Shown here: one piece after another, positions 525 to 57,556 of the stretch
Layout of the letters: each line of letters begins with the position of its first letter
Position numbering within the stretch: the first letter of the stretch is position 1
Assembly (NCBI GenBank): GCA_964035545.1
Contig: OZ037767.1
Location: 8,690,581 to 8,754,580, forward strand
Length of the DNA stretch: 64,000 nt
Reading direction: 5' to 3'
Origin: Bugula neritina
Lineage: Eukaryota; Animalia; Bryozoa
Translations under genes and position numbers: made by a program
The notes under the pieces: model-generated
The model's input: the letters and a program-made list of their open reading frames with translations, nothing else
Databases searched by the model: none
What the model was told of the DNA's origin: nothing

Positions 525-1406
525 CAAAGAAGAATGAGTAATCCTGTAGCATACAGAAACCAGGGCCACCTGCCTTGCCACAATGCCTCCCGGAGGTACA
601 GCATGCAGTGGGATGAAACATCCTATTTTTCCAAATACAACGAAAAGCTAGCAGCTTCTTGGTACCCTAGTCCGTACAAGTCACCCCTCAAAAATGTTCT
701 TTCTGCTCCAAGTTCCCACTCGTTCAGCAAGCATGGCTGTCCTATGCAACAACCACCACCACCACATGCAATGCCAGGACCGCACAGCTATGCTCAACAA
801 AATAGTCCTAGAAGTTATGGCTCGCCAGAAATAGCTCAACCCATGGATGCAGCTGTTGAACGATCTCGATACAAAACAGAGCTATGCCGGTCATATGAAG
901 AGACTGGACAATGCAAGTATAATGCTAAATGCCAGTTTGCTCATGGCGAGGAAGAACTACGTCCTGTAAAACGTCACCCCAAGTATAAAACCGAGAAGTG
1001 CAAACCCTTTCACGCCACAGCCATCTGTAACTACGGTGCAAAGTGCACTTTTATCCATGATGAGAGGGAGCTGTGCGAGTCATCACCCCAGTCTGCTGCC
1101 TCGACACCGGTCAAGCAATCATCATCAATGAAACTGCCCATCACAGCTCCTCTAACCATCACCTCGTCAGGGGAATCACCTGATAGTTCCATCACCAGTG
1201 GCTCACCTTCACAAAATACACCAGTTTTGAGCGAAGACAACTTTGTCGCAAGGCTTTCGCCAACTCCAAGTTTTGGCAGCGATGCTGCTAGTCATGCCAG
1301 CACCTACTCGCCCCCTCCTTCTCCTAAATGCGAACTGCACTTCAATGCCAGCTCTCCTTTAGATATGGGACTCGACGTAACTCTCTTTAGTAAACTTTGT
1401 TTGTAA
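525..1406 (+). CDS. ZFP36: ZFP36/TIS11 (tristetraprolin-family) tandem CCCH zinc-finger mRNA-decay factor, main coding exon
   Basis: Two CX8CX5CX3H fingers with the RYKTELC and KYKTEKC lead-ins and an 18-aa linker, which is diagnostic of the family. N-terminal RRYS motif and Ser/Pro-rich C-terminus. A strong acceptor (ttttattttcag, ends 524) opens in frame (CAA AGA AGA ATG). First ATG in the exon is 534; stop TAA 1404-1406. Confidence 0.93.
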
Positions 1407-6695: not shown

Positions 6696-7386
6696 TGCAC
6701 ATTTAGTTAGTGCAGCATTGGTATTGTACTCAGCACAAATAAATAGTTAGTTGTGTATTATATGCTACATTATGTGTATCTATGCAATAACATTCTATTA
6801 TCAATAGTCTTAGCTACACCATGTATTATAGTGATGAGTAATAATATAACTATGAGTGAAACCATTCTCTATAGTCAAACTATAAACTCTATAATCTTGA
6901 GTGTACAGACAGTGTCCTATCTAGAAAGTTACAGTTGGTGAAGCTTTGACCAATTCCTTTTGATAACCTTTTAGGGGGATGTGATGTCACTTGTTTTATA
7001 GTCTCCGAGTGGATGAGAAAATGTGAGATTCTCTTAGTGGAAGTCAAGTAAATGTCTTTTCTTCCAGAGTTCCTACAATATTTATCACTTATTATGTTAT
7101 ATCTTTTTTATAATTACTCTAAGTTCATATCTGAGGTGATAAAATACTATTAATGGGCAAATATAAAGTGTTATTTTACGATATCTTCGTTCTTGAAAGC
7201 ACTATTAATTATTATATGAAATTATATTTCCTTTCCGTTACATTTGTTGCAGCTATTTTTAGCTACAAATGAGTCAATCTGGTTCATAAAAAGAAGTTCT
7301 ACATAGACATGATTTTGGAATTGTTAGAATGCTGTGAGTGGTTCATGAAATCAGTGTGGTAGACACTTTATTAACTATTACTGAGT

Positions 7387-7925
7387 AGTAGACACCTCAC
7401 CGACCCTGGTAGACACCTCACTGACTCTAGTAGACACCTCACTGACTCTGGTAGACACCTCACTGACTCTGGTAGACACTTCACTGACTCTGGTAGACAC
7501 CTTATTGATTCTGGTAGACACCTTACTGATTCTGATAGACACCTCACTGACTCTGGTAGACACCTTACTGACCCTGGTAGACACCTTACTGACTCTGGTA
7601 GACACCTAACTGGTTCTGATAGACACCTCACTGACTCTGGTAGACACCTTATTGATTCTGGTAGACACCTTACTGATTCTGATAGACACCTCACTGACTC
7701 TGGTAGACACCTTACTGATTCTGATAGACACCTCACTGACTCTGTTAGACACCTCACTGATTCTGGTAGACACCTTACTGATTCTGATAGACACCTCACT
7801 GACTCTGGTAGACACCTTACTGACTATGGTAGACACCTTACTGACTCTGGTAGACACATTACTGATTCTGGTAGATACCTCACTGACTTTGATAGAGACT
7901 TCATTAATTCTGTTAGACACTCTAT
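7387..7925. repeat. 21-bp minisatellite, about 25-26 units (consensus GGTAGACACCTCACTGACTCT)
   Basis: Continuous 21-bp period with point variants; it explains four artefactual ORFs on both strands. Confidence 0.97.
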
Positions 7926-23900: not shown

Positions 23901-24525
23901 GTTAGCATAAATTCACACATTTCACCTGCATTGTCAAAACAGATGGATAAGCATTGATTTTTTTAAAATAAGAAAGGAAGTGCTAATCACCCGCAGCTTT
24001 TAGATTAACTTTATATCTCGGCTAAGTTTTAGTTATATTTAAAAGTTGACAAAGAAATGTTTTTTAATGCTAATTTTAATTTGTTTCTTTGAGAGACATG
24101 ACAAATAAGGCAAATATTTCCTGATTCTAAGGGTACTATAAGATATGGTTAAAAAGCTAAAGTACTTGGCTACAGTTAATGAAATCTAAATTTCAAAAGT
24201 ATTTATAAAAAATAATCAGTACTGTCAATTTAAAGCAATAATTTATACATTAAATTTTTCAGCTACAAAAAGAATAGCGCCTTTTGATTGTCCAAGTATG
24301 AAATCTCAGGTAGACAACTCCAAAATGCAAGACTAGTGAATGAAAAATGACTTGCAATATTTGATAGATTAAAGTATTTTTATTTTAAGTATGTAATCTT
24401 ATAGATTCAGATTTGGGCATACAAATTTAGATTCTGCATTGGGTTGCTTTTGTTGCACACAATGTGTATAACAGTGTTTATAACTTGTTACATTGAAAAT
24501 TATTAACCTTGTGAACAAACACAAA

Positions 24526-24878
<353 letters not shown>

Positions 24879-27800
24879 CGTACGAAATAATACCAAATTG
24901 TCTGCAGAATCGCAAATTCCTCCCTTTGGTAAAAGTGTGGGGTTTGGGGGGGGGGTACGGCTAGAAGACTGCTGTATTCGGATGGGAAGACAAATTAATG
25001 TTGAAGCAGTTCTAAGGCTTAAGTAAGAGAGGTAATCCATATATTGTATTCCATGTTATTTAACAGACATTGCCATCATATGGACAATGCTGTTTTAAGT
25101 TTTAGTGAGATATTACTTTGATCATCAAATTTAAAATCGTGCAAGCAGCAAATAAGAGTTAATTCAAGGAGCCTCTGCCATATCTGCAAGTAGAAGACAT
25201 ACAAGCATATAGCTACATCCGCTATCACTCCCATAGTTTGTACAGATAACAAAGAGTCAGGTGTCTCCCTTTCCTTGTGTTTATTTGATCTCTTCATTTC
25301 CCCATCATTGAGGACTAGGCATTCTCTAGCTGTATATATTGTGGACTTCATTGGCTGGCTGTCAAGTTTATGAGATGAGAAAGGCAGGTTGGTTGCCACG
25401 CAAAGTCTACCTGGTACTTTACAATGTCACCTTGCAACATCAAGCAGTTATTGATGGCTACTACAGAGTTGAGAGGCAAAAACTTGGCTGCTAAAATATT
25501 TTCTATTTGTTAATATATCACATCATTAAACACGCATTTCCTGGAAGCTGTAATGGCCAGGCAAGACTTATAACTTTCAAATCGTATTCTGTGAAGTCGA
25601 TGCAATAAAATGGCGAATTATTATAGGCATTAGATAATAGATGTGCATGCATAGGGGTAATAAAGGAGGTGGAGTAATTACATAATTACAGTTGTGCATA
25701 CATTTTCACATATATGAAAAATAACTAGCAATTTTTAGTTGTAAATGGGTTAGATGGAAATAAACTAAAAGGCAATAGAGGAAATGAAATACTGCATTCG
25801 CAACATTGAATCAACATTGAATCAACATTGAAGTCAACTACGTCATAATAATAGTCTAAAGCTTCTATTTATATTTTGAGATTTAATACTTGATTACATA
25901 TCTCCCCCATCTAAATAGCTACCTTGTATATAGACTCTTAGTTCGCCAGTTCAGCTTTTTCTAGTAAAATAGTGCCAAAGGTTAATTTATGTCTGCTTTT
26001 ATGTACAGCATTTCCTAAAACTTTATACATGTGTTGATAACTTACAAGTTACTAGCTAAATAAATGGCATCTGCAAAATTTTTATTGTTTCATCAGCATA
26101 TGCAATCACCCAGAACAGTGGTAGGTGGTCAAGAATGTGTACAAAGCAATATATCTTCAGTTATGAAATATTCTTTTACACTTCATGCTGGTGGCACACC
26201 AACCCTGACATTTTCATTCAAACTCATTGATTTTCTTTAGAATAGTCTGATGTTTGACTCCAAACACATGGTGCATAATTAGCATGCGGTGAAACAGCTT
26301 GCTTGAATTTGCCGCCTTGCCATCCTAGTGGGAATACAAACCGTATTCATAATTAATTTTCACAACTCTGAACAATGAATAGATAAATGTGTGATCTCAG
26401 GTATGGGGAGACAACTGAAATTAAAGCGCATGTTTGTTTACTTGTTTACTGCCATAAACATCTGCCCTTTTGGCATGCTTGACTAAATAGCCTTAAATCT
26501 ATCAAATTACAATCCCAACACAATAAAACCTCTGTAAGCACACGTAATAGAATCAGATCCACTTGATAGTTGTTTCACAGTTTGGGCTATTGCAGTTACA
26601 AGCAATAATTGGGCTGTTGCATCATTATATTATTTGTGTTATTTCCATCTGGCATTCCTTTGTTGTGGTGATAGCAAGTCATCATCAATCTAAAGTCATG
26701 TTATTAATTGGTAAACTTTAAAGTGCCTACATCTGGAGAATGAATGAACCCTCTTAATAACATGTTAATAATATCTTTTAATTACTCATTACCCTATATA
26801 TATAACTCAACAGTTGAACATAAAGCAACATAGTTGATACGCAGTCCCAACCAACTCTTATGCAAAATACTAGCTTAAGCAATTATAACCGTAAATATGT
26901 ATTGCTTTTGAGGTTCCCATTGCAATATAAACTGTGCAACGTCGTCGGACAGTTTTATGACAATGCTGAAATTTATTGAAGCTTTTAGAATATTGCTGCA
27001 TCATCCCAACTTAGCACGAACTTGTAATTAAATGAGGAACATTACAATCCCAGGGTTGCCATCAACTGAGATGGTAGTGATTGCTTGGCCACTTGCCAAT
27101 TTTGTTTGACCAAAACCTAAGTAGAGCCACGCAGTACCACGATATTGTGCTGTTTACAACATGCAACCTGGTACCTTCGAAGTATAATTGGTCTAATAAC
27201 TACTTAGATGCAATGTAAATGACACTATTGTTGGTGTGAAAGAAGAGAAAAGTGTGTGTACACTTGAAATTATTTGTGTTTGCTTTGATGAAATCTTTCT
27301 GAATACCGATTGTTATAAATGGCGCCATAACATGCAGAAAAGTTATTACAGTTTAAATTAATAATTGCTAATGTGTTAACTAGGTATTTGCTGATCCAAG
27401 GCTCCTGTTAGAATGTGTGTGATTGCTGAACAGCTTATATCTACACAAAGTAGCTAGACAACGGGATGAAGCCAAATAAAGCAAGGAACCAAGTAAAAGC
27501 ACAGCCACTGCTTTCTTGACTTTTTCAAATTGCTGTGAAATTTGTTTTGGCTGCTGGTAGGCATTACGCAATCCAACCTTCATACTGGTTATAATGCTCT
27601 TCTGCATTACATGATGCTTATTCATATAATATGATTTGCAGCCTGCTGTCTTGCCATGCTCTTTGCAATTCAACGTGCACATTATAAGAATAATAAGAGT
27701 TATCTTTCCACAAAAGCATTTTCACGAATGCAACCAGATATTGTAGAAGGAAAGAAAGTAAAATCTCCAAAAAATTTCAAATTGAAGAAGTTGCATTTTT

Positions 27801-42584: not shown

Positions 42585-44457
42585 AATAGCAGAATAAGAA
42601 CATTACTTCATGCACATGTGATTTAATTATCTTGATTAAACAAAATTATCTGAAAGTGAAACTAAAAAATAGGTAATTTTAGACTTGAGAATTTCAAAAG
42701 ACTTGCAGGACAATTATTAAAAGTTTAAAGTATAGAATTGGAAAGAAGCTAGATATTTTAAAACTCATTTTGTGTTAAAGAATCCAAGTGATGGAGTTAG
42801 TAAGCTTTTGCTGAAGTAAAAGTTGCATTTATCATAATTATTTGAAGGTCTCAAAATCGGTGCCTCAATGAGTGCGAATCTACTACAAATCTGTGTGCAT
42901 TGGAAAAGAATGAAGGAACCGGTATTTATAGCCACGATAGATACTTCTTCAACACCAGAACTAAACTGTGCGAAAAGTTCCAATACCGGGGCTTTAACGG
43001 AAACGCCAACAAGTTCCTGTAAGTGCTTCAGTACTCATGTAAAACTGGCTAGCGACATCAGTACAAAATAATATTTCAAATACGCAATACAGCTTCTCTT
43101 GTTCTTACACATATAGCAAAATTTGAAATATTTTCGTACTTAAAATCAATGCGTCCAAATGAACAGGTTGATTCTTTTACATAAACTTGTGAAAACCAAT
43201 GTAAATAATCTAATCCAGTTTTTTGAAGTTGATTTTTAAAAAATAATTAATATATAGTAGTTCATAATTGCATTTTAAATTTGCATAAAATGGAGTACTT
43301 TAAATAAAAATAAAAAGTCTTATCAAAATGTTCCTAAGAAACAAATACTTTTCTCGACGCCTTAAAATTAAATTATAACCTTTTTGAACAAGCACTGAGG
43401 ATCCAGTGATTTTATTTAACTGACTACGTTTTTATAGCTTTACTAAAACTTACCTTTAGTGCTTGGTGGTTTGATTGTCACTGCATAAAACTGAATTCTC
43501 TGAGAAGACAACTCTAGATAAAGAGGCTAGTCCGTAATTGTGACCCAGGCAGTCAGAAAAGCACTTTGTGACAAAATTCACATTTTTAGTTAAAGCTTGA
43601 TTCTTATTTGCCTCTTTATACTGATTGATTTGCAGTTTAAATTTTCGAAATCGGACCACTATTGTAATAGTGGTCCGATTTCAAAAATTCAAACTGCAAA
43701 TCAATCAGTATAAAGAGGCAAATAAGAATCAAGCTTTAACTAAAAATGTGAATTTTGTCACAAAGTGCTTTTCTGACTGCCTGGGTCACAATTATCATGC
43801 TGTACAATATTGAAAAATGTAATACTGTAAAGTGTAATTACTCAAGCTGGAAGTTGGTAATAATACCTTGAACAGTCAGAGTTGTCTACCTAATGATTGC
43901 TACTCAACTAGAGTTGTATTCCTTTTAATCTTTGCTTAAAGAGAGTTGTCTTCTTTGTGATATCTACTCAGCTAGAGTTGTCTCCTCTGTAATCACTAAC
44001 AAATCTACTGCAGTCACCGCTTGTTGCTTCATGCTATCTCATCTTGTTTTTGTACAGAACTCTTCCCAAATGTATCTCAAGATGTCAGAACATTGTATAC
44101 CAATCCTGCCACGTCCATCAAAAGGACCCTGGACCTTGCATAAGTCACATTACAAGATATTATTATAATACAGAGACAGGGCTCTGCGAGGAGTTTGTTT
44201 ATGGTGGATGCCACGGAAACGAGAATAGGTTTGAGTAAGTGACAGGTGTCATCCCTTATTTTAAATTGTCATCACAGGCTAGTGGGAAATCAAAAGTTAA
44301 GCACATTATTTGCTGCAATAGTTGGTTACTATGGATTGTACCATCTGTACAAATAGAGTAGAATCATTGATAGTTGGTTTGATGAGTAGAGATTGAGATG
44401 TACTCTATGCGTTTGTATTGTAGGACTCTCCGTGAATGTCAGGTAACATGCGAGTAG
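41589..44457 (+). CDS. Secreted three-domain Kunitz/BPTI-type protein, 194 aa, 5 exons
   Basis: Exons 41589-41655, 42242-42377, 42848-43018, 44058-44234 and 44424-44457. All introns are GT-AG, phases 1,2,2,2, total 585 nt. Protein: MGYTFIISLSILVAFMGLTSASDRDCMLPPHPGTNERSPTIQFYYNSTLRQCLSFFYYGGGGNKNRFWSQNRCLNECESTTNLCALEKNEGTGIYSHDRYFFNTRTKLCEKFQYRGFNGNANKFLTLPKCISRCQNIVYQSCHVHQKDPGPCISHITRYYYNTETGLCEEFVYGGCHGNENRFETLRECQVTCE. It has a hydrophobic signal peptide and three FxYxGxxGNxNxF signatures; AATAAA at about 44873 and 44895. Confidence 0.93.
42491..42620. repeat. 130-bp palindrome: 38-bp inverted arms around a (TA)n core
   Basis: CACATGTGCATGAAGTAATGT...GCTATTGA (TA)n TCAATAGC...ACATTACTTCATGCACATGTG, in Kunitz intron 2. 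Confidence 0.9.
43535..43794. mobile_element. 260-bp near-perfect foldback palindrome (probable foldback MITE with TA ends)
   Basis: 129-bp arms with 2 mismatches and a 2-nt loop at 43664-43665, in Kunitz intron 3. It produces the two mirror-image ORFs 43456(-) and 43625(+). Confidence 0.85.
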
Positions 44458-45158
44458 CTAGCAGTGTCCACTCTCTCTAGCTGCCTCTCTCCAGCTGCCT
44501 CTTTTCAGCTGCCTCTCTCTAGCTGCTACTGATGTTGCTGCTAATGATGGTGCACTGTTGCCACTGGCTACAATCCCAAATCTCTGGTGTCTTTAATTAC
44601 TATATTTATGTAGATTTAGATCAACTAGAACATTCATACTCACATTTTATGTTGACAACGATACATACTTGTTTCTTAAAAACAAATTTGTATATTGAAT
44701 ATTGTAAAATATAATTATATTATAATATATAGTCCAAAATCATATACTTATATATGCCACTGGTGGAGACGTGTATAGCTTCTGTTGTAATTTGTACATT
44801 GTTTTTCTATGGTTTTATTAAATTATTTTGTAATGAATTTGTTCCATTTATATATTATGCAGAATAATGTGAAATAAACTAGAATCATAATCAAAATAAA
44901 ATGTGATACATTTAGATTCATTACTACATGCTCTAAAATAGCATATACAAGTATCATCACAACATCCTGTTACTCAAAACATTGAAGACCCTTCAATATC
45001 TTAATTAAAATATATAAACTATTATGGATGAATATATTAGATAATTCTTACTAACCAGCAATTAGCTGTTTCTTAATAACTACAGCTCTACTAAAGCACT
45101 AAAAATACCGGCCCATTTTGAAAATATATGGAAGAAACTATATTGCAGCAGAGGTACT

Positions 45159-45646
45159 GGTTTCATCCCAGATAGACGCTTCCCACTTATAGATGCTTCC
45201 CAGTTGGACATAATTTTTTGTTTTGGCTCTGGATATAATATAGTAATATACCTATATATACATATATAACTATTGTATTGATTGCTAAACATGAAATAAT
45301 AGTTGATATAAATTATCTGGAACAATATTCCAACTTTCACAAATTTGTGTCGGCTAACAAACAGTAATAAATTAATAATACACATTATCATTAATAAATA
45401 CTTCTTACTGAAATATTATTTTTTCAAACAACAAGAAGTAGTATAGAAAATGCAAAATTAATAAGTTAATGCAGATCAAAGGAATTTACGTACTAAATAG
45501 CAAAAAATTGATCCAAATTTATTTGAATATACATATATTTCAATAATATTCCTATAAATTGGGAGTATATAATATACATAATTACATTGTACTAAAATAA
45601 ATAACTAAAAGCATCTAACTGGGAGGCGTCTATCTAGGATGGCACC
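45159..45646. mobile_element. Old MITE-like element with ~28-bp imperfect inverted ends; diverged copy at about 48089-48548
   Basis: GGTTTCATCCCAGATAGACGCTTCCCA versus the reverse complement of CTGGGAGGCGTCTATCTAGGATGGCACC. The interior aligns with 48130-48500. No clear TSD. Confidence 0.5.
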
Positions 45647-46314
45647 AACCTTTACAGCCCTTTATTGTCAGATTGCTTATATATATTACGGCAGAAAAAC
45701 ACATTTAGATTGAAGAAATGACCAGAGTTATATCCCAGATTGCTCACTTTCCTCTATAATGCATTAGAGTATTGTAGGAATATTAATTATAAAAGAGAAC
45801 ATGAGTGCATTAGCATAGCAAGAACGTTATTCTAAAAGTTAAGCTGATGAGACAATGCTTTTATTTTTAAACAGCATTACATGAAAGTAAAATTTTCTTT
45901 AAATCAAAAGAGACTAAAAGTTTAAATAGTTTAGATCAAGGAAAAGTTCAACTGTACTAATTTGAGCTCCGTTTTAAAATATAGTGGATCTGCTGTGAAT
46001 CTGCTTTGATCTCAGCTCAAAGTTCCCAATTGTTGTTTCCTCTCCCTATTATTTCTACCCAGAATAGTTAACTTTTGTGTTGTCAAAGCCTAATAAAATA
46101 GCTAAAGGATTAGCAGGAAAATTGGCCAGCAATTAAGATAATTATGGGGTCTCTACAGGTGTATAAGTGACAAGAGTCCAGGGGTTGGGGGCAGTAGTGG
46201 ATTGTCACTCCTAGCACTAAGTCTTTAACAAAAAATACCTACGTTATTTATTACCAGTGTTGGAGATCTAATAAGCAGAGGTACATATCTACAGAAGTTT
46301 GAATAATATCACTA

Positions 46315-47493
46315 ATGATGTCGCAAAGACCTAGAGTAAGTATACAATTGTAATACTATATGCATACAAAGTAAAATGAACTGTTATAAGTAAAATAAGC
46401 TGTTATTTAAGAGAAATGAGTCAATATAATATACCCTAACATTATATGTTGCCATTGATCTTAATATGGCATAATTTTTACTTAATTTATGCATTTTAAA
46501 ACTAAAATCTAGAAGAATCTTGTTCTGATGTAGAAATAAATTGTTAAAATAGTCTGCCAAATTATTTACTTTAATACTAAATTAAACTATCACCAGAGAT
46601 AAAATCTTTCAATTTTAAAATTTATTAAATTTTCTTTCATTAAAATAGTTTGAAATTTATTTGTAATTATAAATTATCAGTATCTCTTGTAAATCAACTA
46701 TTTTGTTCTTTCATTTGCAGATAGGAAAAATCGTGATTCCTGTCACAGCTGAAGATATAGAAGAAGGAAAGAAACGTACTCAGAACCAGGTAAATATAAT
46801 CAATATTATATTATATTATTGTTAATATATTATGTTATGTTATATGCTGTATTACTGTTTATTATATATTCTATGCATGCTTGTAAAGGATAGAAACAAA
46901 TGCTTAAAAATATAATATATTTTCAAAATGGGATGTTGCATAATTGTTTACTATTGCTGGGATAGTGGCTCAGTTTTATCATTGGAATGTTTATTAAAAA
47001 TAAACATAATGGTTTAAATAATTTTGTATAATTAGTTTAGTGAAAATAGCAACTCTATATTATATCACTAAGAAGCCAAATTTACTTTTAACTGCAATTA
47101 AACAGTTTCAAATGTGACTTAACAGCAAGTGAAGGAGTCTTCAGCTACTATACTACCTGGCGTGTTGTAATTCCTTAACGAAAGAAATTAATTTGTTTCG
47201 AATTTGAATTGTTCATAAATTACTGACCATACATTCTGTAGAAGTTAAAAAGCTGACAAAACTAAAACCTTCAGCCTGCAATTCTATCTATTAATACACT
47301 GTCAACAAATTAATTTTTATTTTAGGGGCCATCAGATGCTTTGCGCTACCAGGCAAAAACTCAGCAAGGATGTCAAGGTCATATGGTGAAGCCCAGCCCT
47401 TCTTACTGGTTTCCTGAAGGCCGTAAAAGATGTCATGAAGAATGGAATCGTCAGTTTGCAGAAAAGAAGAGAAAAACTGATAGCTCTCAATAG
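46315..47493 (+). CDS. Uncharacterised small basic protein, paralog A (85 aa, 3 coding exons)
   Basis: Exons 46315-46335, 46721-46789 and 47326-47493, all phase 0 with strong GT-AG sites; AATAAA at about 47525. Protein: MMSQRPRIGKIVIPVTAEDIEEGKKRTQNQGPSDALRYQAKTQQGCQGHMVKPSPSYWFPEGRKRCHEEWNRQFAEKKRKTDSSQ. Exon boundaries and frame are conserved in paralog B. Confidence 0.75.
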
Positions 47494-49205
47494 GATAGTG
47501 TGGACATGCATCTCATCTCTAAGCAATAAAATAAGCTTATAATTAGTACCTTATAACTTTTATTTAATGTTTATAATATTATAACATAATATACCTTTTA
47601 ATTAAATTATTGAAACTTTCTCACTTATTTTACAGTTATTTTTAGCTTTCTCTCAATTTAGTAATTTTCTTTGCTGAAAATAAATAAAAATTTGTATGTC
47701 AATTTTAGACTTGAACGTAGCTGCTAAATTTTTTTACGTAAAAATATTCCTAGAGGTAAAGTTTGCACTTGCATTTTCCATCTTTGTATTAAACCTTACA
47801 TTTGTACCAATAAAGCATGAATAAACAACGCTTATAAGCTGCTCGATTTGAAGCTAGTTAGGTAAATAATGACAATGATTTTGGCTTTCAACATTTCACT
47901 TTCAACATTTAACCTTTAATTTTCTGGCTTTATGTCGAACAATTCACAATTGATTAGCTAATTTTACACTTAGATGTTAGGGTTGGATTATTATGATAGA
48001 AAATCCCAGGCACCATATTGGGGGTTCACCTAGTGCAGTGGTTTGGGAGGAGAGTGACCAGAGTTGGGTGTTTGTGTATGAAATACCTGGGTTTCATACC
48101 AGTGAGATCTACGCTAATTTTTATTTTGGTACCATTGTATTATATAGTAATATACCTATACATACCTATATAAATGTTGTATTGATTGCTAAATAGCTAA
48201 TTATATGTTAATGGCAAATATAAGTTATCTGAAATAATATATCAATTTTCGAAAACTTGCGTGGGACAAAAAATAAAGCAATACATTAATAATAGACGTT
48301 ATCTTTATTAGCAAAATATCTTTTCAAGCAACAGGAAGTATAAAAAATGCAAAATTAATGAGGTAATGCAGATTAAAGGAATTTTTTGAAATAACAAGTA
48401 CTAAATAACAAGCAATGGACCCAAATCTATTTAAATACCAATATATTTCAATAATGTTCAAATAAATTACACATACCATATATATTGTACCAAAATAAAT
48501 AAGTTTAGTCTAATGACTGACTGGAAATCCTCCATCTGTGGTGGCACAGCTAAGACAAATTCTATGAGCCACTGGCTAAACCAAATACCGCCATGAGAAA
48601 TGACTCGCTGGTTATTGAAAAGCATCCTCACTTAAGGTTTGTTAGGTATGCCTGAAATATCACAATTTTAAGCATGCATTGGCTTAGTATTTAAAACTCA
48701 ATTAAAAATTATACTCTTAATGAGTATTGAAATAGTTAATTGATGTGTGCTGCTAAGAACTAGGCTAATGTTTTTATCTCTCACATGCATATCATGAAAA
48801 AAGAATTTCCATAAATTGAAGATACAAAACTCAGAGCTTAAAATAGTTTAGAACTCTGTACTAATTTGAACTCTGCTTTAAAATATTGCTTACACTCTTT
48901 GATCTCACCTCAAAGTTCCCAATTGTTGTTTCCTTTCCCTATTATTTCTACCCAAAATAGTTAACTCTTGTGTTGTCAAAACTTATTAAAATAGCTAAAG
49001 GATTAGCTGAAAATTGACCAGCAATTAAGATAATTATGGGGTCTCCACATGTGTATAAGTGGCAAGAGTCCAAGGGGTTGGGGGCAGTAGTGGATTGTCA
49101 CTCCTAGCAATCAGTCTGGCACTAGGAAATATCTACACTACTTGTTACCAGCATTCCATGTCTAGTACACAGGAGTACATATCTACAGAATTTTAAACAT
49201 CATTA

Positions 49206-51014
49206 ATGATGGCACAAAGACCAAGAGTAAGTATACAACTGTAATACTATGCTTACAAAGTAATACAAACTGTTTTCTAAGGCAAATGAGTTGATAATAT
49301 ACATCAACATTATGTGTTGCTTCAAGCCATTGATCTTAGTATGGCAGAGTTTTTACTTAATTTATGCATTTTAAAATTAAAATCTAGAATAATCTAGTTT
49401 TGATGTAAAAATAAATTATTAAAATTTTCCTACAAACAATTGACTTTACTACTAAATGAAATGATCTTAAGAAATAAAATCTTTTAATTTTAAAATTTTA
49501 TTAAGTTTTCTTTCATAAAAATAGTTTGAAATGTATTTATAACTAAAAAGTATTGGTATGTCTTGTAAATCAACTATTTTATTCCTTCATTTGCAGGTAG
49601 GAAAAATCGTGATTCCTGTCACAGCTGAGGATATAGAAGAAGGGGAAAGACGTACTCAGAACCAGGTGAATATGATAAATATTATATTATATTATTGTTA
49701 ATATATTATGTTATGTTATATATATGCTATTACTATTTATTGTATATTCTATACATTGTGAAGGATGGAAACAAATGCTGAAAATATATATTATCAACAT
49801 TAAATTTAAAAGCTAAACATCTTCATAATCATAATATTCCATTTTGTAAAATAAACTGTTCAGTTCAACTTGCACCAAACTGAATTCTCTATTAAACACA
49901 ATATACTGCAATTACATGTTGTAAATTAATTTTTATTTTAGAAGCCATCAGGTGTTTTGTGCTACCAGGCTAAAACTCGACAAGGATGTCAAGGTCATAT
50001 CGTGCAGCTCAATCCCAGTTCCTGGCTTTTTAGAGTAAGTACAACTGTAATAATATTATGCATACAAAGTAAATTAAACTGCTTTTGAATGAGTCAATAA
50101 TAAATAATGAAGTAATTTATTTTCAAGCCATTTTACTTGTAATTTTATAGCAGACTATTTTTACATGGTGAAGTATTTCAAAAAATGAATAAATTTTTTT
50201 GTTAATGAAAAGAATTATTGAAAAATCTTCTGAGCTTTTGACTTTAACACTGAAAGTAGAGCAGAGTGAAGCTAGCACCAAAGATATAATTGATTAAAAT
50301 AGTTTTTTTATAACTATAGAGTATAAACTACCCAAAGTATGCCTTATCAAACAATTGTGTTATATACATCCATTTGCAGACAATTATAGTACATCTCTCA
50401 GCTGAAGACCTGGATATAGAAGGAAGAAGGCGAACCTACAGCCTGGTAAATATAAATAGCATATTACTATTATATTAAATATCACATTACCATTTATTAT
50501 AAATGAAAGATATAGGGGCAATTGCTTAGAAAATACGAAACTAAATATATGTAATGACTAGGTATATTAATAGCATTAAATTTGATGTCTACAAATTTCT
50601 GTTATTAGAAAAGCTTGTATTTTTAGTCAAATGTTGAAATTTTATTCAGGAGGAGCGGCTGAGTTAATTGTAAAGTAGACTGAGAATAATATTTTTCAAG
50701 GAGCAATAGTAGAATACCAAACTAGCTGCTTATCCGATGTCATATAATTGTTTACTATTACTGCAGTAGAGGTGCGGTCTAACCGTTGAGAAGTTTACTA
50801 AACATAATTTCTTACAAGTTTTATTACAATAAATTCATTTTTATTTTAGAGGCCATCTGATATTTTACGCTACCAGGCTGCAACTCAGCAAGGATGTCAA
50901 GGTCATATGGTGCTGCCCAGCCCTTCTTACTGGTTCCCTGAAGGCCGCAAAAGATGTCACGAAGAATGGAACCGTCAGCTCCCAGAAAAGAAGAGAAAAA
51001 CTGATAGCTCTTAA
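49206..51014 (+). CDS. Uncharacterised small protein, paralog B (137 aa, 5 coding exons, internal two-exon repeat)
   Basis: Exons 49206-49226, 49597-49665, 49942-50034, 50380-50445 and 50850-51014, all phase 0; AATAAA at about 51049. Protein: MMAQRPRVGKIVIPVTAEDIEEGERRTQNQKPSGVLCYQAKTRQGCQGHIVQLNPSSWLFRTIIVHLSAEDLDIEGRRRTYSLRPSDILRYQAATQQGCQGHMVLPSPSYWFPEGRKRCHEEWNRQLPEKKRKTDSS. Confidence 0.75.
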
Positions 51015-51865
51015 TAGGATAGTGTGGACATGCGTCTCATCTCTAAGCAATAAAATAAGCTTATAATTAGTGCTTTATAACTTGCATTTATTGTTTATAA
51101 TAATATAAAACATAAATATTTTTTAATTTAAATTTAGTAATAATTTTTCACTCTTTTATGCATCTATTTTTAGCTGTGCTTAAAGTTTAGCAATTCTCTT
51201 TGCTAAAAATATATGAATATATAAAGCCAACTCAGCACCACCTTCCTGTCAATTTTAGACTTAAACATATAGCAGCTAAGTTGTAACCAGCTTGCTTTGT
51301 TAGCAACTTAAGGTGCTGATAAACAGTTGAAATACATATATAAAAGTGTAAGGTGAATGCTTTCGTAATATCTTTATTGCTGGCCAACAATGGTTTAGAT
51401 TTGTTGCTCATTTAACTGCCAGCACTTTTTGTCACCTGACAGCCACAACCACTATATACAGTTTAACTTCAAATTCCCTCACTGGCCTTTACAAAAGACA
51501 ACCATATTTATCAAAATTGAGAGTTTTAAGGGTCCTGATTAATCTTTAACAACTTGAGACTTTTCTGTGCACGCGAACTTGTAGAACAATTAAGAGTTGT
51601 CTTCTCCTAGTTTTTGCCTAAATCAGTTAAATATCTTTAAGGAGTTATTAAACTTAATGATTTTAAATATTGTAAATAATTTTACAAAAAAGTAATGCTA
51701 AGCATGAGCAGGTTAATCTGGACTCTAGAGGATAATTTATATTTGTAAAATTGAGCTCTACCAACAAGTTTAAATTGAACTGTATATTATATAAGCATTA
51801 TTGCTTTTAAAACAATGCTGTTGGTTAAGATGCATAATCTTTATACTACTTTAATGATGATTTTT

Positions 51866-52200
51866 TGAGTTAATTGTAAAGTAGACTGAAAATACTGTTA
51901 TTCAAGCAGCAATATTAGAATGCCAGACTATAATAGTTGCTTATCCGATGTCATATAATTGTTTATTATTACTGCAGTGGTAGTGCAGTCTAACTGTTGA
52001 GAAGTTTACTAAACATAATTTCTTGCAACTTTTATTACATAAATTTATTTTTATTTTAGAGGCCATAATTTTGTATTCATTGTTTATAATATTATGACAC
52101 ATAATACCTATATCTTTTATTTAAATTTGATAATTTTTTATCACTTCTTTTAAGGTTATTTTTAGCAGTCTCTGATTTGCTTGTCAATTTTAGACTTCGA
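51866..52200 (+). pseudogene. Remnant third copy of the small-protein locus with the terminal exon deleted
   Basis: Aligns to the end of paralog-B intron 4 (from about 50660), keeps the acceptor and 7 exon bases (ttttag|AGGCCAT), then jumps to sequence resembling the region downstream of the poly(A) site. Confidence 0.65.
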
Positions 52201-53326
52201 AGTAGCTGCTAAATTTATATGTAAAAATCAATCATAAAAATATTCCAAGAAAACATATATATTGTTATCTATTATTATTACTCATTATCATTGTTTATTT
52301 GTTTTACAGTTGTTGGAAGTTGTCTTCCTTCAATTTGGTTAGCTGCAAATAAACATACACGAGCCTTATCAATCATTTTTTAGCATTTTTGAAGCCTTTC
52401 ATGGAGAATTGTCAAAATTCATAAAATATATATACACCTTCAGTCTGAGTATACGCTGCAACACAAATTATTAAATCATTATGTACTTAAAACACAATGT
52501 ATTTAATTATAATAAAAAGAATTTAGGCACTACCTACCATGTTTGCATGGCTTAGTTTATTACTTCTTAGTTCAAGCTATTCTCAGCATTGTAATCACTG
52601 TACTGGCCGTGTTCTATCAGTACTATATTCTCAAATGTGACCATAGTCATTATTTTTTGCAAAAGATCTGTAATCTTTTTAAATTTTATACTGCAAACAT
52701 TAAGCTTAATTTGAACAATTGCATACATTAATTTTACCTACTATAATTAGCTTAATGCTTTGGTTTCTATCAACAAAGAATTTCTTTATTAGTATTGATA
52801 TTTAATAAAAGGTTCTCTATTACTAAGCGCTTAGTGTTGGCTTCCAAGAAAACTGCGTTATCTAAAACGAAACTGCGCTATTTAAACTGATCTGAGTTAT
52901 TTAATGGTTATTTTGACTGCGTGTACGTTATTTTCTTGAACTTTAATGTTGGAGTTATCAAGTCTCATATGCGAAATGATCATGGATTATTTCACTATTT
53001 TAAATGACTTAAAATTATATGAAAGTTTTGTCTTTTATTGTGATGTTTGGTTTTCAATTAAACTAAGAAGTTCATTTATTTTCCAAAATGCATTCTTTAC
53101 TGAAAGCTATACCACTGCCATAGCTGTACATATAATAAATCTATGTGAACTCTTTAAAAGATAACTCCACACTACAATAATTTTATTTATTTGAAGTTAG
53201 ACCAACCTAAACTTTGTTAAATTATTACTGTTGCACTATTAATTCATGCAACTGCTTAACAGAAAGCGATTTCAAACTATTTGTTGTTTCACAAGCTTGA
53301 CTAAAAAACCATTTAGCATAAGTTTA

Positions 53327-54590: not shown

Positions 54591-55514
54591 TCAGGCCGGT
54601 GTAACAGGTGCTACTTGTGAAAGGCTGCCTCTACACTTGAACAGCTTCCTTATATGTACTCTGTATCCAGGAGTCATGCAGATGTATATCACAATGTTCA
54701 GGGTACCATAACATGCATTATAGATCAAAGCTCCCCATGTCAAAGCGCGAGTTACCCTTTTTAAAGTCTTTACATTATAACCAGGCGTAGAGATCAAGGT
54801 GGGAATGTAAGAGAAATAAAAGAGAGCACAAATCAGCATAACATACGTGGCAGACCTTTTGATGCTTTCATCATCATGTCCAGGAACATTTCTTTCAGCC
54901 ATTCGTTTTAATTCTACTCTCACTTTGTACAAACAGATTGAACAGATTAGGAAAGTGGCCAAAATTATCAGACCATATGTTATCAAAGTTGCAGCATCAA
55001 CTTGAATGGGTAAAGCACCAAATTCGCTGTAGCAGTACAAGTAACCTTTTGTAAAGATTGTTGGAGCTATTGTCCCATAGCTGGTAACCCAGATTATAAT
55101 GACCGAAACTCCAAAATTGTCCAATATTTTGCTAGAGGTAGACTGCAATGGTCGGCAAATAGACACGTACCTTTCATAGCTGCTCAAAGCAAGCACAGCT
55201 AATCGAGCAATTGAAGAACCTGCTATTAATATTATTGCAGCAATTTGGTACTGCTGAGCTTGCTGGCTTGTCAGACTCAAAATGGGTGTAGCAATTTCAC
55301 AGCTGACTGCGAGTATTTGAGATACATTTACTGCTACGTCAGTAACGCCAATGTTTATTATGCTCCAGTAGTGTTTGGTTTTCTTTGAATCTTCTATTGC
55401 ACTTAGAACGATGAGATTTACAATGTTGCTCATTACACTGACAGAGCTTAATAGCAGATGTACAGCAGATAACTCTGGTGCTTTGCAGGGTTTTGTAACA
55501 CCTTCGCACAGCAT
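54591..55514 (-). CDS. Divergent rhodopsin-like (class A) GPCR, 7TM region in one exon, possibly chemosensory or orphan
   Basis: Seven hydrophobic segments, TM1 N, TM2 D, SYERYVSICRPL (E/DRY), TM4 W, TM6 FSYIP and TM7 LNIVIY. First in-frame ATG is at 55514; the ORF track start at 55529 is a GTG. The frame stays open to 55577 and a cag acceptor at 55561-55559 suggests a possible upstream exon. Confidence 0.88.
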   Translation of the reverse strand: MLCEGVTKPCKAPELSAVHLLLSSVSVMSNIVNLIVLSAIEDSKKTKHYWSIINIGVTDVAVNVSQILAVSCEIATPILSLTSQQAQQYQIAAIILIAGSSIARLAVLALSSYERYVSICRPLQSTSSKILDNFGVSVIIIWVTSYGTIAPTIFTKGYLYCYSEFGALPIQVDAATLITYGLIILATFLICSICLYKVRVELKRMAERNVPGHDDESIKRSATYVMLICALFYFSYIPTLISTPGYNVKTLKRVTRALTWGALIYNACYGTLNIVIYICMTPGYRVHIRKLFKCRGSLSQVAPVTPA

Positions 55515-57556
55515 GTCGCTAATTTTCACGTCTCCATCATCAGAGTGACAGAAGCAAACTGCTTGCAGATCGACAAATTATTTTATTGATTAAAATAATT
55601 TACAATGGATTATTAAAATCCGTTAGTCTACATTGTGTTACAGAGCCATATTCTTGTTTCAATCAAATTAATGGCAGATTAAAATTCTGTAAACAAAAAG
55701 TTTTTTGTTTCAATATATAGTCTGCAGTTTTGCCACTTTGAACCAAATTTGTTTTGCAATAAAATGATACAAGCTTATAAGTTCTTCAAACAATTAAATA
55801 CATGTTTTTGTAATAATTTTTCTTGTTCAGCATAAAACTCAAAACAGTCAATTTTTTACTTGTGTCAAATTTATCTTGATAAGGTTGATTGTCAACTAAG
55901 CCTTGAAATATTATTTAGTAAATTTTAAAAACTTTCAGTAGGCCTATTTATAATTTTGTCATTTGAAAAATGTTGGTCAGTTTTTATATTACATAGCTTA
56001 TAAGTTAATATGTTATTTAAAAATTATTTTTAACCAGTTAACACTTTATTAAAGAGAGAAAAGTTCTCTAAGTCATTTGTAGTTGCACAGAAAATATGGT
56101 TTCACAGAAACAAAGTTTCATAATAGGCTGCTCAACTGTATTATGAATAACACAATAGCACAATAACAGTGCTATAGATTAATGACACTGTACTCAATCA
56201 AATTCAAATATCCTCATCATATAAGCGATATCTCTATGAGGACATATTTAATTTTCAGTTTACAAATCATACACAATTTTAACTTGTATAAATGCATTAT
56301 ATATTAATGAGAAAAAATATCAATATTTTATAATAGGAATTTTCTTTGTTTTAATAAAATAATCATATACTTGTACGTTGGACTGACATATACTTAAAAA
56401 TTGATTGACTTGTTTAAGTAGAAAACTTACGTTATTCATTAAAAACCACTGAGTTTAAGCGACTAAACAGAATGCACATGTGAATGCCTTTATTACATTT
56501 TTTCTGGTCAATGCTAAAATATGCATGTGCAAAGTGAATTTTTACCTTGTAATCAGTTCATTTAACTAGCCTAAATAGAGAGGTTATTTTGCTCATCTGC
56601 TCTATGCGATTTAAGTCTTAGTTGTTAGAGATTAAATTTTATGAATACATATTATATATAAGCTGATTCATATAAAAAGGACAATTTGTATATTTCTCGT
56701 TCTAATTAAGTTGACGTGGGCGCAAATGCATAATTATTATAAATTGAAGAATTGCGTGATATTTCAACAGTTTAAACTTTAAGAGATGCCATTACTTTGA
56801 CAATTATGTGCAGCATTCAACGTTAAAGATGGTACCAATGGTGTAAGCATATAAAAATAACATTATATAGTGCCACATCTTCACAACTCATTTAGAATTT
56901 AATAGAGTAACTGCAACTGATAACTTGCAGTCTATAGCTATAAAATATTAAAGACGGCAAAATTTTGTTATTTATTTAGACTTGGGAGAGAAGCAGCGCC
57001 TGCTTTTATAAAGCAACATGGCTGAAAGTGACAACTACTAATTGAATTGTCAAGGTTGGTACAGTGATGGAGAAATTGAGAAAAGCAGTTTATAGACGCA
57101 GGGTATTAAAACTTTTCTGCTACTGCATCAAATGGGAAGTGTAGTTCAGCCTCCAGTTTTTCCTGATTTAATTTCTCAGAATTGGAGCTATTAGTAATCT
57201 TTTGATAATCGCACTTCAGCCTATCTATATTATAAATTTCAAGGCTCGAAAACATGGCTATTGTCATTATCTCCAATATTTTTAAACTTTTAGGCTGTTT
57301 ATTTAATAATAAACACTAAGCTTCATGCATTTCAATAATTTCATAAATAATCTTTTTAGCTCCTAGTCTAACATACGGTAATACATTAGTTGTTATCAAC
57401 AAAGGTTATAGCTCTGTGAAGAAAACTAGAAAAAACCTAATGTTGATAACAAAAATGTCTTTATTGGTATTGCTATTCAATTAAAATCACTCTCTATATC
57501 ACTGCATTTCCATTATTTGCAGAATAGATTTTTCTTTTGGTGTTTGAAAACAGTTA

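What the first reader, a model, noticed from the sequence alone, without database searches (positions are those of the whole stretch)
46315..51014. Hidden tandem family of orphan small-exon proteins with a GCQGH motif and a bipartite-NLS-like tail
Seen: two genes invisible to the ORF track, built from 21-168 nt phase-0 exons with strong splice sites, conserved MMxQRPR starts and AATAAA after the stop. Between the last exons of A and B I count 7 synonymous codon differences (tca/tct, ttg/tta, gca/gct, ttt/ttc, cgt/cgc, cat/cac, aat/aac) against 6 amino-acid-changing ones, with no indels, while the introns carry many indels. This points to constraint on this reading frame. Known: KR-x(10-12)-KKRK is the nucleoplasmin-type bipartite NLS, and both proteins end RKR-CHEEWNRQxxE-KKRK with no signal peptide. 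Inference: a lineage-specific nuclear microprotein family; the invariant YQAxTxQGCQGH plus RCH could form a Cys/His metal site. I recognise no family, so this is the best candidate for an undescribed system in the window.
Basis: partly seen in the sequence, partly recalled or inferred. Interest (0 to 1): 0.8.

Follow-up and report, generated by a model that had tools for sequence, protein, structure and literature searches.

The report
Orphan small-protein gene pair, Bugula
Two neighbouring, previously unnoticed small genes in the moss animal Bugula neritina look like real protein-coding genes with no relatives in any database searched, which makes them ordinary lineage-specific "orphan" genes whose proposed nuclear role is still only a guess.

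Summary
At 46315-47493 (gene A, 3 exons, 85 codons) and 49206-51014 (gene B, 5 exons, 137 codons) there are two tandem paralogues. All their exons are phase 0 with GT..AG borders. A sibling-species contig (L004/L008, JGI sample 3300003318) carries an A-type copy (probably A's orthologue) with the same three exons and splice sites.

Coding constraint is supported:
- dN/dS is 0.22-0.34.
- Differences by codon position run 3rd > 1st > 2nd.
- There are no frame-breaking indels, where about 9-10 gap openings are expected at the intron rate.
- Exon GC is 39-49% against 20-27% in the introns.

The genome is Bugula neritina (tzBugNeri2.1). No relative turned up in Pfam, the PDB, the ESM Atlas, metagenome scans, or a profile search of 1.84 billion protein representatives. 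The own genome holds only this locus.

New points:
- Gene B is an in-frame fusion of two older tandem units.
- A fourth unit survives as a relic at 51866-52228.
- The "invariant YQAxT" is not invariant in the sibling species; only QGCQGH and the C-terminal 35 residues are.

The bipartite-NLS pattern is present and conserved, but nuclear import and the Cys/His metal site are untested. I found no transcript evidence.

Verdict: a real orphan gene pair of modest interest.

The parts
45234..47745 (+). Tandem unit 1 (gene A with about 1.1 kb of upstream and about 250 nt of downstream flank)
   Evidence: Collinear blastn matches to 48138-49794 and 50827-51282; repeat families D1-D17
46100..46225 (+). 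Most conserved non-coding block of the unit, with TATAAG at 46162, 153 nt before the ATG: putative core promoter and start of the 5' UTR of gene A
   Evidence: 77-93% three-way identity (A, B, L004) in 30-nt windows, as high as the exons; TATAAG kept in A, B, L004 and L008; block found only at this locus in the genome. Promoter function is inferred.
46315..46335 (+). Gene A exon 1, MMSQRPR, donor GTAAGT; in-frame TGA 15 nt upstream
46721..46789 (+). Gene A exon 2, IGKIVIPVTAEDIEEGKKRTQNQ
   Evidence: orthologous exon in L004 605-673 with 4 synonymous and 2 nonsynonymous differences
47326..47493 (+). Gene A exon 3 (55 codons plus TAG): QGCQGH core, PSPSYWFPEG, RKR-x11-KKRK tail
47525..47530 (+). 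AATAAA 32 nt after the stop of A
   Evidence: not kept in L004/L008
48138..51282 (+). Tandem units 2 and 3, fused (gene B)
49206..49226 (+). Gene B exon 1, MMAQRPR
49597..49665 (+). Gene B exon 2, VGKIVIPVTAEDIEEGERRTQNQ
49942..50034 (+). Gene B exon 3: the first 29 codons of an exon-3 copy, then 2 codons and a donor taken from an exon-1/intron-1 boundary; evolving almost neutrally (omega 0.6-1.0)
50031..50081 (+). Fusion joint: matches the end of exon 1 plus the start of intron 1 of gene A (46332-46383, 87%)
50380..50445 (+). Gene B exon 4, a diverged exon-2 copy (TIIVHLSAEDLDIEGRRRTYSL, 45% identical to exon 2)
50850..51014 (+). Gene B exon 5 (54 codons plus TAA), 91% identical in protein to A exon 3
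51049..51054 (+). AATAAA 35 nt after the stop of B
51866..52228 (+). Relic of a further unit: tail of intron 2 and acceptor, the first 7 nt of exon 3 (AGGCCAT at 52060), then a jump to the 3' flank; the coding part is deleted
   Evidence: (D5, D12, D16, D17)

Best explanation
The locus holds a small, lineage-restricted family of spliced protein-coding genes in the bryozoan Bugula neritina. Gene A (3 exons, 85 codons) and gene B (5 exons, 137 codons) descend from a tandem array of at least four units of about 2.9 kb. A deletion running from mid exon 3 of one unit to the end of exon 1 of the next fused two units in frame to give B. A further unit has lost its coding part.

Shown:
- the gene models;
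- the same three exons and splice sites in an A-type copy (probably A's orthologue) in a sibling species;
- purifying selection on the frame;
- absence of relatives elsewhere.

Inferred:
- Each unit has its own TATA-type promoter.
- The products are soluble, basic proteins: by my residue count 17 K/R against 10 D/E in A, with no signal peptide or membrane segment visible by eye.
- The conserved C-terminal RKR-x11-KKRK acts as a classical bipartite signal for importin-alpha, so the proteins work in the nucleus.
- Because all exons are phase 0, B can also give an A-like product by skipping its two fast-evolving middle exons.

What the proteins do in the nucleus is unknown.
For: Gene models and canonical splice sites.

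Sibling-species contigs L004 and L008 (two alleles, JGI sample 3300003318, labelled with the B. neritina mitochondrial accession AY690838) keep the ATG, both introns, the GT..AG sites and the open frame.

Constraint on the frame:
- dN/dS is 0.22 (A-B), 0.33 (A-L004) and 0.34 (B-L004). Fisher p values are 3e-4, 0.02 and 0.01.
- Differences by codon position are 9/4/13, 7/3/12 and 10/3/14.
- A neutral simulation with the local non-coding substitution spectrum expects 18.6 replaced codons for A-B, against 10 observed (0 of 20000 draws). For A-L004 it expects 16.1, against 12 observed (P=0.028).
- There is no frame-breaking indel in about 255 coding nt, where 9-10 gap openings are expected at the non-coding rate (P about 1e-4).
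- The stop-triplet frequency in the introns is 8.4%, so 85 codons stay open by chance with P about 6e-4.
- Exon GC is 39-49% against 20-27% in the introns.

Not a repeat or transposon: only this locus matches in the 216-Mb genome, by protein, by profile and by promoter DNA.

Fusion and relic.

NLS pattern: present in A, B, L004 and L008 (KKRK becomes KRRK in one allele, still basic). The strict pattern appears in 0.75% of shuffles of the exon-3 residues.

Organism.
Against: - No transcript, spliced read or peptide evidence could be obtained. The word search (range 30-96 aa) returned no 85-aa spliced product. No protein of the 2020 B. neritina annotation, which is in the collection, matched in the exhaustive profile search.
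- Divergence is low: 9-10% in the exons against 12-13% in non-coding DNA. The tests therefore rest on 22-27 differences per pair, and the three pairs are not independent.
- Gene conversion between A and B could inflate their similarity. The 3' flank of B is also 85% identical to A.
- The upstream block and the 3' half of intron 1 are conserved as well as the exons.
- In A-L004, exon 3 alone has omega 0.51, with replacements piled in its first 12 codons.
- The NLS is a pattern match in a basic peptide. The looser textbook rule is met by 7% of shuffles.
- AlphaFold2 puts the tail in a helix at low confidence (pLDDT 56).
Confidence: 0.6

Rival explanations
1. The open frames are young and have no function as proteins. 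The locus is a recently duplicated stretch, perhaps transcribed as a non-coding RNA. Its frames are still open because too little time has passed, and gene conversion keeps the copies alike.
For: Exons are only slightly more conserved than introns. The best-conserved block is non-coding. B's internal exons evolve at omega 0.6-1.0. One unit is already dead. No transcript or annotated protein was found.
Against: Replacements are about half the neutral expectation in two comparisons, one of them between species. Codon position 3 changes most. Indels are absent from the exons but frequent in the introns. Exon GC is twice the intron GC. Splice sites are kept in four sequences. No Rfam family matches.
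Confidence: 0.22
2. The proteins are precursors of secreted, amidated peptides. The Gly-tribasic motifs (EEG-KKR and PEG-RKR, and IEG-RRR in B exon 4) would be convertase cleavage and amidation sites, and B would be a two-copy precursor.
For: Gly followed by two or three basic residues occurs twice in A and up to three times in B. It is kept in the sibling species as EEG-KRR/KTR and PEG-RKR. Reading these as processing motifs rests on general knowledge of prohormone processing.
Against: There is no signal peptide. The N-terminus MMSQRPR-IGKIVIPVTAEDIEE has at most a 10-residue weakly hydrophobic stretch interrupted by Lys, followed by an acidic run. An in-frame stop lies 15 nt upstream of the ATG with no acceptor between, so no upstream signal exon can be joined in frame. 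The motif is EEG-ERR in B exon 2. No signal-peptide predictor was available, so this was judged by eye.
Confidence: 0.05
3. The exons belong to a known family or to a mobile element that the searches missed, or to a larger gene with more exons outside the unit.
For: Short exons searched one at a time have little power. The joined proteins were not searched.
Against: There are no Pfam, PDB-profile, Atlas or metagenome matches. The exhaustive profile search found only the sibling-species copy plus two spurious repeat proteins that match on a repeated EEWN-like word. The family is single-locus in the genome. Stops lie directly upstream of the ATG and at the end of the last exon in all copies.
Confidence: 0.04

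Closest known systems
Taxonomically restricted (orphan) genes for small proteins in animals
   Same: No detectable relatives outside a species complex, a short product, few short exons, local tandem duplication with birth-and-death turnover, and absence from at least one automatic annotation.
   Different: This pair already shows measurable purifying selection, canonical conserved introns and a conserved TATA-type upstream block, so it is not a borderline proto-gene. Its origin (de novo or diverged beyond recognition) is unknown.
Nucleoplasmin-type classical bipartite nuclear localisation signal (two basic clusters 10-12 residues apart, bound by importin-alpha)
   Same: RKR, then an 11-residue linker (CHEEWNRQxxE), then KKRK, at the C-terminus. 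It is conserved in both paralogues and in both sibling-species alleles.
   Different: Only the pattern is shared; there is no homology to nucleoplasmin. Binding and localisation are untested. The region is predicted helical at low confidence, whereas NLS peptides bind importin in an extended form.
Neuropeptide or prohormone precursors with Gly-dibasic amidation and cleavage sites
   Same: Repeated Gly-(K/R)(K/R)(K/R) motifs and a modular, duplicable exon structure.
   Different: No signal peptide is visible, and one motif copy is not conserved (GERR in B exon 2).
Small Cys/His zinc-binding motifs (zinc knuckles and the like)
   Same: Four possible ligands, C-x2-H ... C-H (C16, H19, C36, H37 of the last exon), are invariant in all four full-length copies.
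   Different: The spacing fits no Pfam zinc-finger model. There are only two Cys. The structure prediction is unconfident. The truncated copy in B keeps only the first pair.

Membership tests
Any Pfam-A family | Score above the family's gathering threshold | tested here: not met
   No family at E up to 1 for any of the five exon peptides searched (A exons 2-3, B exons 3-5), searched exon by exon
Any protein family with a sequenced relative | Significant sequence or profile match outside the B. neritina complex | tested here: not met
   The word search found only P0001. The profile search of 1.84 billion representatives found only P0001 plus two spurious repeat proteins. The PDB profile search had a best E of 0.07. 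Atlas scores were 0.84, below the lead level. Metagenome scans were blank or chance matches. Limit: only the last-exon peptide (55 aa) has enough length to search, and the joined protein was not searched.
Transposable-element protein | Dispersed multiple copies in the genome | tested here: not met
   Three matches, all inside this locus, by protein, by profile and by upstream DNA
Classical bipartite NLS | Two basic residues, a 10-12 residue linker, then a cluster with at least 3 of 5 basic residues | tested here: met
   RKR-x11-KKRK in A, B, L004 and L008. The strict pattern occurs in 0.75% and the loose rule in 7% of shuffles.
Classical bipartite NLS | Importin-alpha binding and nuclear accumulation that depend on both clusters | not testable with these tools
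   Needs a localisation or binding experiment
Zinc-binding Cys/His motif | Four conserved ligands in a spacing and fold that can hold a metal ion | tested here: inconclusive
   C16, H19, C36 and H37 are invariant in the four full-length copies. There is no Pfam match. The AlphaFold2 model has pLDDT 56 and shows two helices.
Secreted peptide precursor | N-terminal signal peptide | tested here: inconclusive
   By eye there is none: the hydrophobic stretch is 10 residues or fewer, holds a Lys, and is followed by acidic residues. No dedicated predictor was available.
Expressed protein-coding gene | Spliced transcript across the predicted junctions | not testable with these tools
   No RNA data are at hand. 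No spliced product was seen in the protein collections, which is weak negative evidence.

The most novel reading that the evidence does not exclude
A family of nuclear microproteins born within the Bugula lineage. It would have a new Cys/His-containing motif (QGCQGH ... RCH) that binds a metal or a nuclear partner. It would also be caught in the act of growing a two-module protein by in-frame fusion of tandem gene copies.
Probability: 0.15. Interest if true: 0.45.

Novelty: new member of a known kind. Interest (0 to 1): 0.27.

Why it matters
If expression is confirmed, the pair adds two small genes that prokaryote-style ORF calling and at least the 2020 B. neritina annotation missed. It also gives a tidy example of birth-and-death evolution in an orphan family: duplication, an in-frame fusion that keeps splice phase, relaxed selection on the internal modules, and a dead relic, all within 7 kb. 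That would interest people who study orphan genes and microproteins, and those who annotate bryozoan genomes. It does not open a long-standing question, and no function is in sight.

Tried and rejected
- Pfam on each exon peptide: nothing.
- Word search with the last exon: only the sibling-species ORF P0001.
- ESM Atlas by features: best 0.84, unrelated phage and bacterial clusters, below the lead level.
- Metagenome scan with the exon-3 alignment: 354 pattern matches, none confirmed.
- Exact 20-nt exon-3 pattern in metagenome contigs: three chance hits, one in an adenylate-kinase-like gene and two in unrelated contigs.
- Exhaustive profile search: P0003 and P0004 are repeat proteins that match by summed repeats containing an EEWN-like word, not relatives.
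- PDB profile search: nothing below E 0.07.
- Rfam on 44500-52500 at E up to 0.1: nothing.
- tRNA scan of 43000-53000: nothing.
- AlphaFold2 on the last-exon alignment: pLDDT 56, so no fold search was run on it.
- Idea that 47975-48120 is a SINE: rejected, because it is single-copy in the genome.
- Positive control for the collections: the neighbouring TIS11-like ORF finds B. neritina proteins from NCBI, Logan and JGI. So the collections do hold this species, yet they hold no model of genes A or B.
- In one search the exon strings were indexed together inside the script only to draw random mutation positions.
- Complex prediction with importin-alpha was not attempted: no usable reference was available, and it would have needed a spliced model.
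- The window is not human.
Full report
**What is there.** The window is AT-rich animal DNA (29-38% GC in 2-kb windows).

- Gene A: 46315-46335 (MMSQRPR), 46721-46789 (23 codons), and 47326-47493 (55 codons plus TAG).
- Gene B: 49206-49226, 49597-49665, 49942-50034, 50380-50445, and 50850-51014 (54 codons plus TAA).

All internal exon lengths are multiples of three. Every intron starts with GT (GTAAGT, GTAAAT or GTGAAT) and ends with TTGCAG or TTTTAG behind a T-rich tract. An in-frame stop lies 15 nt (A) or 12 nt (B) upstream of the ATG pair. No AG lies between that stop and the ATG, so the frame cannot be extended upstream.

**Organism.**
- The assembly has 216,009,554 bases in 321 records. 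This matches the published Bugula neritina assembly tzBugNeri2.1, GCA_964035545.1: 216.00 Mb and 320 scaffolds, to which I add the mitochondrial record to reach 321 (PMC11480708).
- The TIS11-like ORF at 534-1403 clusters at 90% identity or more with KAF6031569.1 of Bugula neritina.
- The next named relative is from the bryozoan Watersipora subatra, at 43%.
- The window is not human.

**Tandem structure.** Direct-repeat and blastn comparisons show a unit of about 2.9 kb. A's unit (45234-47745) is collinear with 48138-49794: upstream region, exon 1, intron 1, exon 2 and the start of intron 2.

Next comes a copy of the intron-2 tail and the first 70 nt of exon 3 (49923-50011). Directly after it, 50031-50081 matches the end of exon 1 plus the start of intron 1 (46332-46383, 87%).

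So B is two former units joined by a deletion from mid exon 3 of one unit to the last bases of exon 1 of the next. The joint happens to keep the frame and supplies the donor GTAAGT.

The second half of B (its intron 3, exon 4 and most of intron 4) is much more diverged from A: there is no nucleotide match except a 72% stretch. From 50827 onward, identity is again 85-90% through exon 5 and 200 nt of 3' flank. This points to an older split, later gene conversion of the 3' part, or both.

A further remnant lies at 51866-52228. It keeps the intron-2 tail, the acceptor and the first 7 nt of exon 3, then jumps to the 3' flank. It is a dead unit.

Protein, profile and upstream-DNA searches of the whole genome find nothing outside this locus. 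This is not a dispersed repeat.

**A copy in a sibling species.** The word search with A's last exon returned one cluster (P0001, with member P0002), from two contigs of about 1.1 kb of JGI sample 3300003318. The contig names carry AY690838, the accession of the B. neritina mitochondrial genome (PMC2678162).

L004 and L008 differ by 2.3% in non-coding positions. They are most simply two alleles.

Both carry the whole of an A-type gene: the conserved upstream block with TATAAG, ATG, GTAAGT, TTGCAG, exon 2, GTAAGA, TTTTAG, exon 3 and a stop.

Non-coding divergence from A is 12.3%, about the same as A from B (12.9%). So the duplication is about as old as the split between these Bugula lineages. 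B. neritina is a known sibling-species complex (references in PMC11480708 and PMC7576161).

The copy resembles A more than B: it ends in SSQ and has F44.

**Is the frame constrained?** Counts were made exon by exon and summed.

| Pair | Synonymous differences / sites | Nonsynonymous differences / sites | dN/dS | Fisher p | Differences by codon position (1/2/3) |
|---|---|---|---|---|---|
| A-B | 13 / 51 | 13 / 201 | 0.22 | 3e-4 | 9/4/13 |
| A-L004 | 9 / 50 | 13 / 202 | 0.33 | 0.02 | 7/3/12 |
| B-L004 | 11 / 52 | 16 / 201 | 0.34 | 0.01 | 10/3/14 |

(Nei-Gojobori counts.)

Nei-Gojobori ignores transition bias, so I also simulated neutral change with the substitution spectrum measured in the local non-coding alignments.
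- A-B: 18.6 replaced codons expected, 10 observed; 0 of 20000 draws reached the observed value.
- A-L004: 16.1 expected, 12 observed (P=0.028). Requiring also that no stop is created gives P=0.011.

Non-coding alignments carry 27-36 gap openings in 770-900 aligned bases. At that rate 9-10 gap openings are expected in the coding 255 nt. None that breaks the frame is seen (P about 1e-4). One caveat applies: AT-rich, low-complexity introns are more indel-prone than exons.

Stop triplets make up 8.4% of intron triplets, so 85 open codons have a chance probability of about 6e-4. Exons have 39-49% GC against 20-27% in the introns.

Taken together, this is good evidence that the frame is read, though several limits apply:
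- Each test rests on fewer than 30 differences.
- The pairs share branches.
- Plain sequence identity hardly separates exons (86-97%) from introns (78-89%).
- A 125-nt upstream block (46100-46225) and the 3' half of intron 1 are conserved as well as the exons.

B's inner exons behave differently. Exon 3 has omega 0.6-1.0. Exon 4 is only 45% identical in protein to exon 2. All exons are phase 0, so skipping the two inner exons would give an A-like protein. I infer that they are either dispensable or on their way out.

**What is conserved in the protein.** The alignment of the four exon-3 peptides shows QGCQGH as invariant. Residues 21-55 (V-x-P-S-P-S-Y-W-F-P-E-G-R-K-R-C-H-E-E-W-N-R-Q-x-x-E-K-K-R-K-T-D-S-S) are nearly invariant among the full-length copies.

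Most A-L004 replacements fall in the first 12 codons of exon 3.

One sibling allele has KRRK in place of KKRK, and KTR in place of KRR in exon 2.

**Relatives.** None were found:
- Pfam: no match for any of the five exon peptides searched, at E up to 1.
- ESM Atlas: best score 0.84, from unrelated clusters.
- JGI metagenome scans: blank, or chance matches.
- PDB profile: nothing below E 0.07.
- Exhaustive HMMER search of 1.84 billion representatives: only P0001 and two repeat proteins that score by summing repeats containing an EEWN-like word.
- Rfam: nothing.

The collections do contain B. neritina proteins, including the 2020 annotation. The genes are therefore unannotated there. Whether Ensembl's RNA-based annotation has them could not be checked.

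The joined spliced proteins were not searched, folded or looked up. This limits sensitivity, since only the 55-residue last exon is long enough to search.

**How it most likely works.** Shown: two intact, constrained, spliced frames, each behind a conserved TATAAG-containing block (46162 and 49054).

Inferred: small basic soluble proteins. By eye I see no signal peptide. The only hydrophobic stretch is IGKIVIPVTA, followed by an acidic run.

The C-terminus fits the classical bipartite NLS rule: RKR, an 11-residue linker, then KKRK. The fit is kept in all copies. The strict pattern arises in 0.75% of shuffles of the same residues and the loose rule in 7%. Nuclear import is thus the best single guess, but I put it at no more than about 40-50% even given a real protein.

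AlphaFold2 on the last-exon alignment gives two helices (residues 4-18 and 30-53) at pLDDT 56. That is too weak for a fold search, and it says nothing firm about a Cys/His metal site.

The Gly-tribasic motifs (EEG-KKR, PEG-RKR) recall amidated-peptide precursors. Without a signal peptide I rate that reading at about 5%.

**Verdict.** The coding reading is supported. The orphan status is supported as far as these databases reach. The nuclear and metal-binding ideas remain untested. Unannotated lineage-restricted small genes are common in invertebrate genomes, so the finding is real but of modest interest.

Noticed in passing
window 43535-43794: A near-perfect palindrome: two 129-nt arms, 98% complementary, 2 nt apart. 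It looks like a foldback or MITE-like element, just upstream of the Kunitz exon.
   Followed up: partly
window about 44080-44450, + strand: The upstream neighbour has an exon encoding a Kunitz/BPTI-like motif (FVYGGCHGNENRFE) followed by a short last exon ending TLRECQVTCE-stop. I read this by eye only and ran no family scan.
   Followed up: no
window 534-1403, + strand: An intact 290-aa TIS11/ZFP36-type tandem CCCH zinc-finger ORF (Pfam zf-CCCH, E 6e-19). It is in the same 90%-identity cluster as KAF6031569.1 of Bugula neritina; the cluster representative (from a Logan run) is 96% identical to it. I used it as the species marker.
   Followed up: yes
window 54594-55529, - strand: An intronless 312-aa rhodopsin-type GPCR ORF with only a weak 7tm_1 match (E 6e-8), probably from a lineage-specific receptor expansion.
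   Followed up: no
window 7371-7799 and 24400-25040: A minisatellite that reads SVRCLPE repeats in one frame, and a (GT)n microsatellite of about 600 nt. Both produce the long spurious ORFs in the ORF list.
   Followed up: no
L004 and L008 (JGI sample 3300003318): Two contigs of about 1.1 kb from a Bugula-labelled metagenome carry two alleles (2.3% apart) of the gene-A-type copy. Such host contigs in symbiont metagenomes are a usable source of sibling-species sequence for other B. neritina loci.
   Followed up: yes
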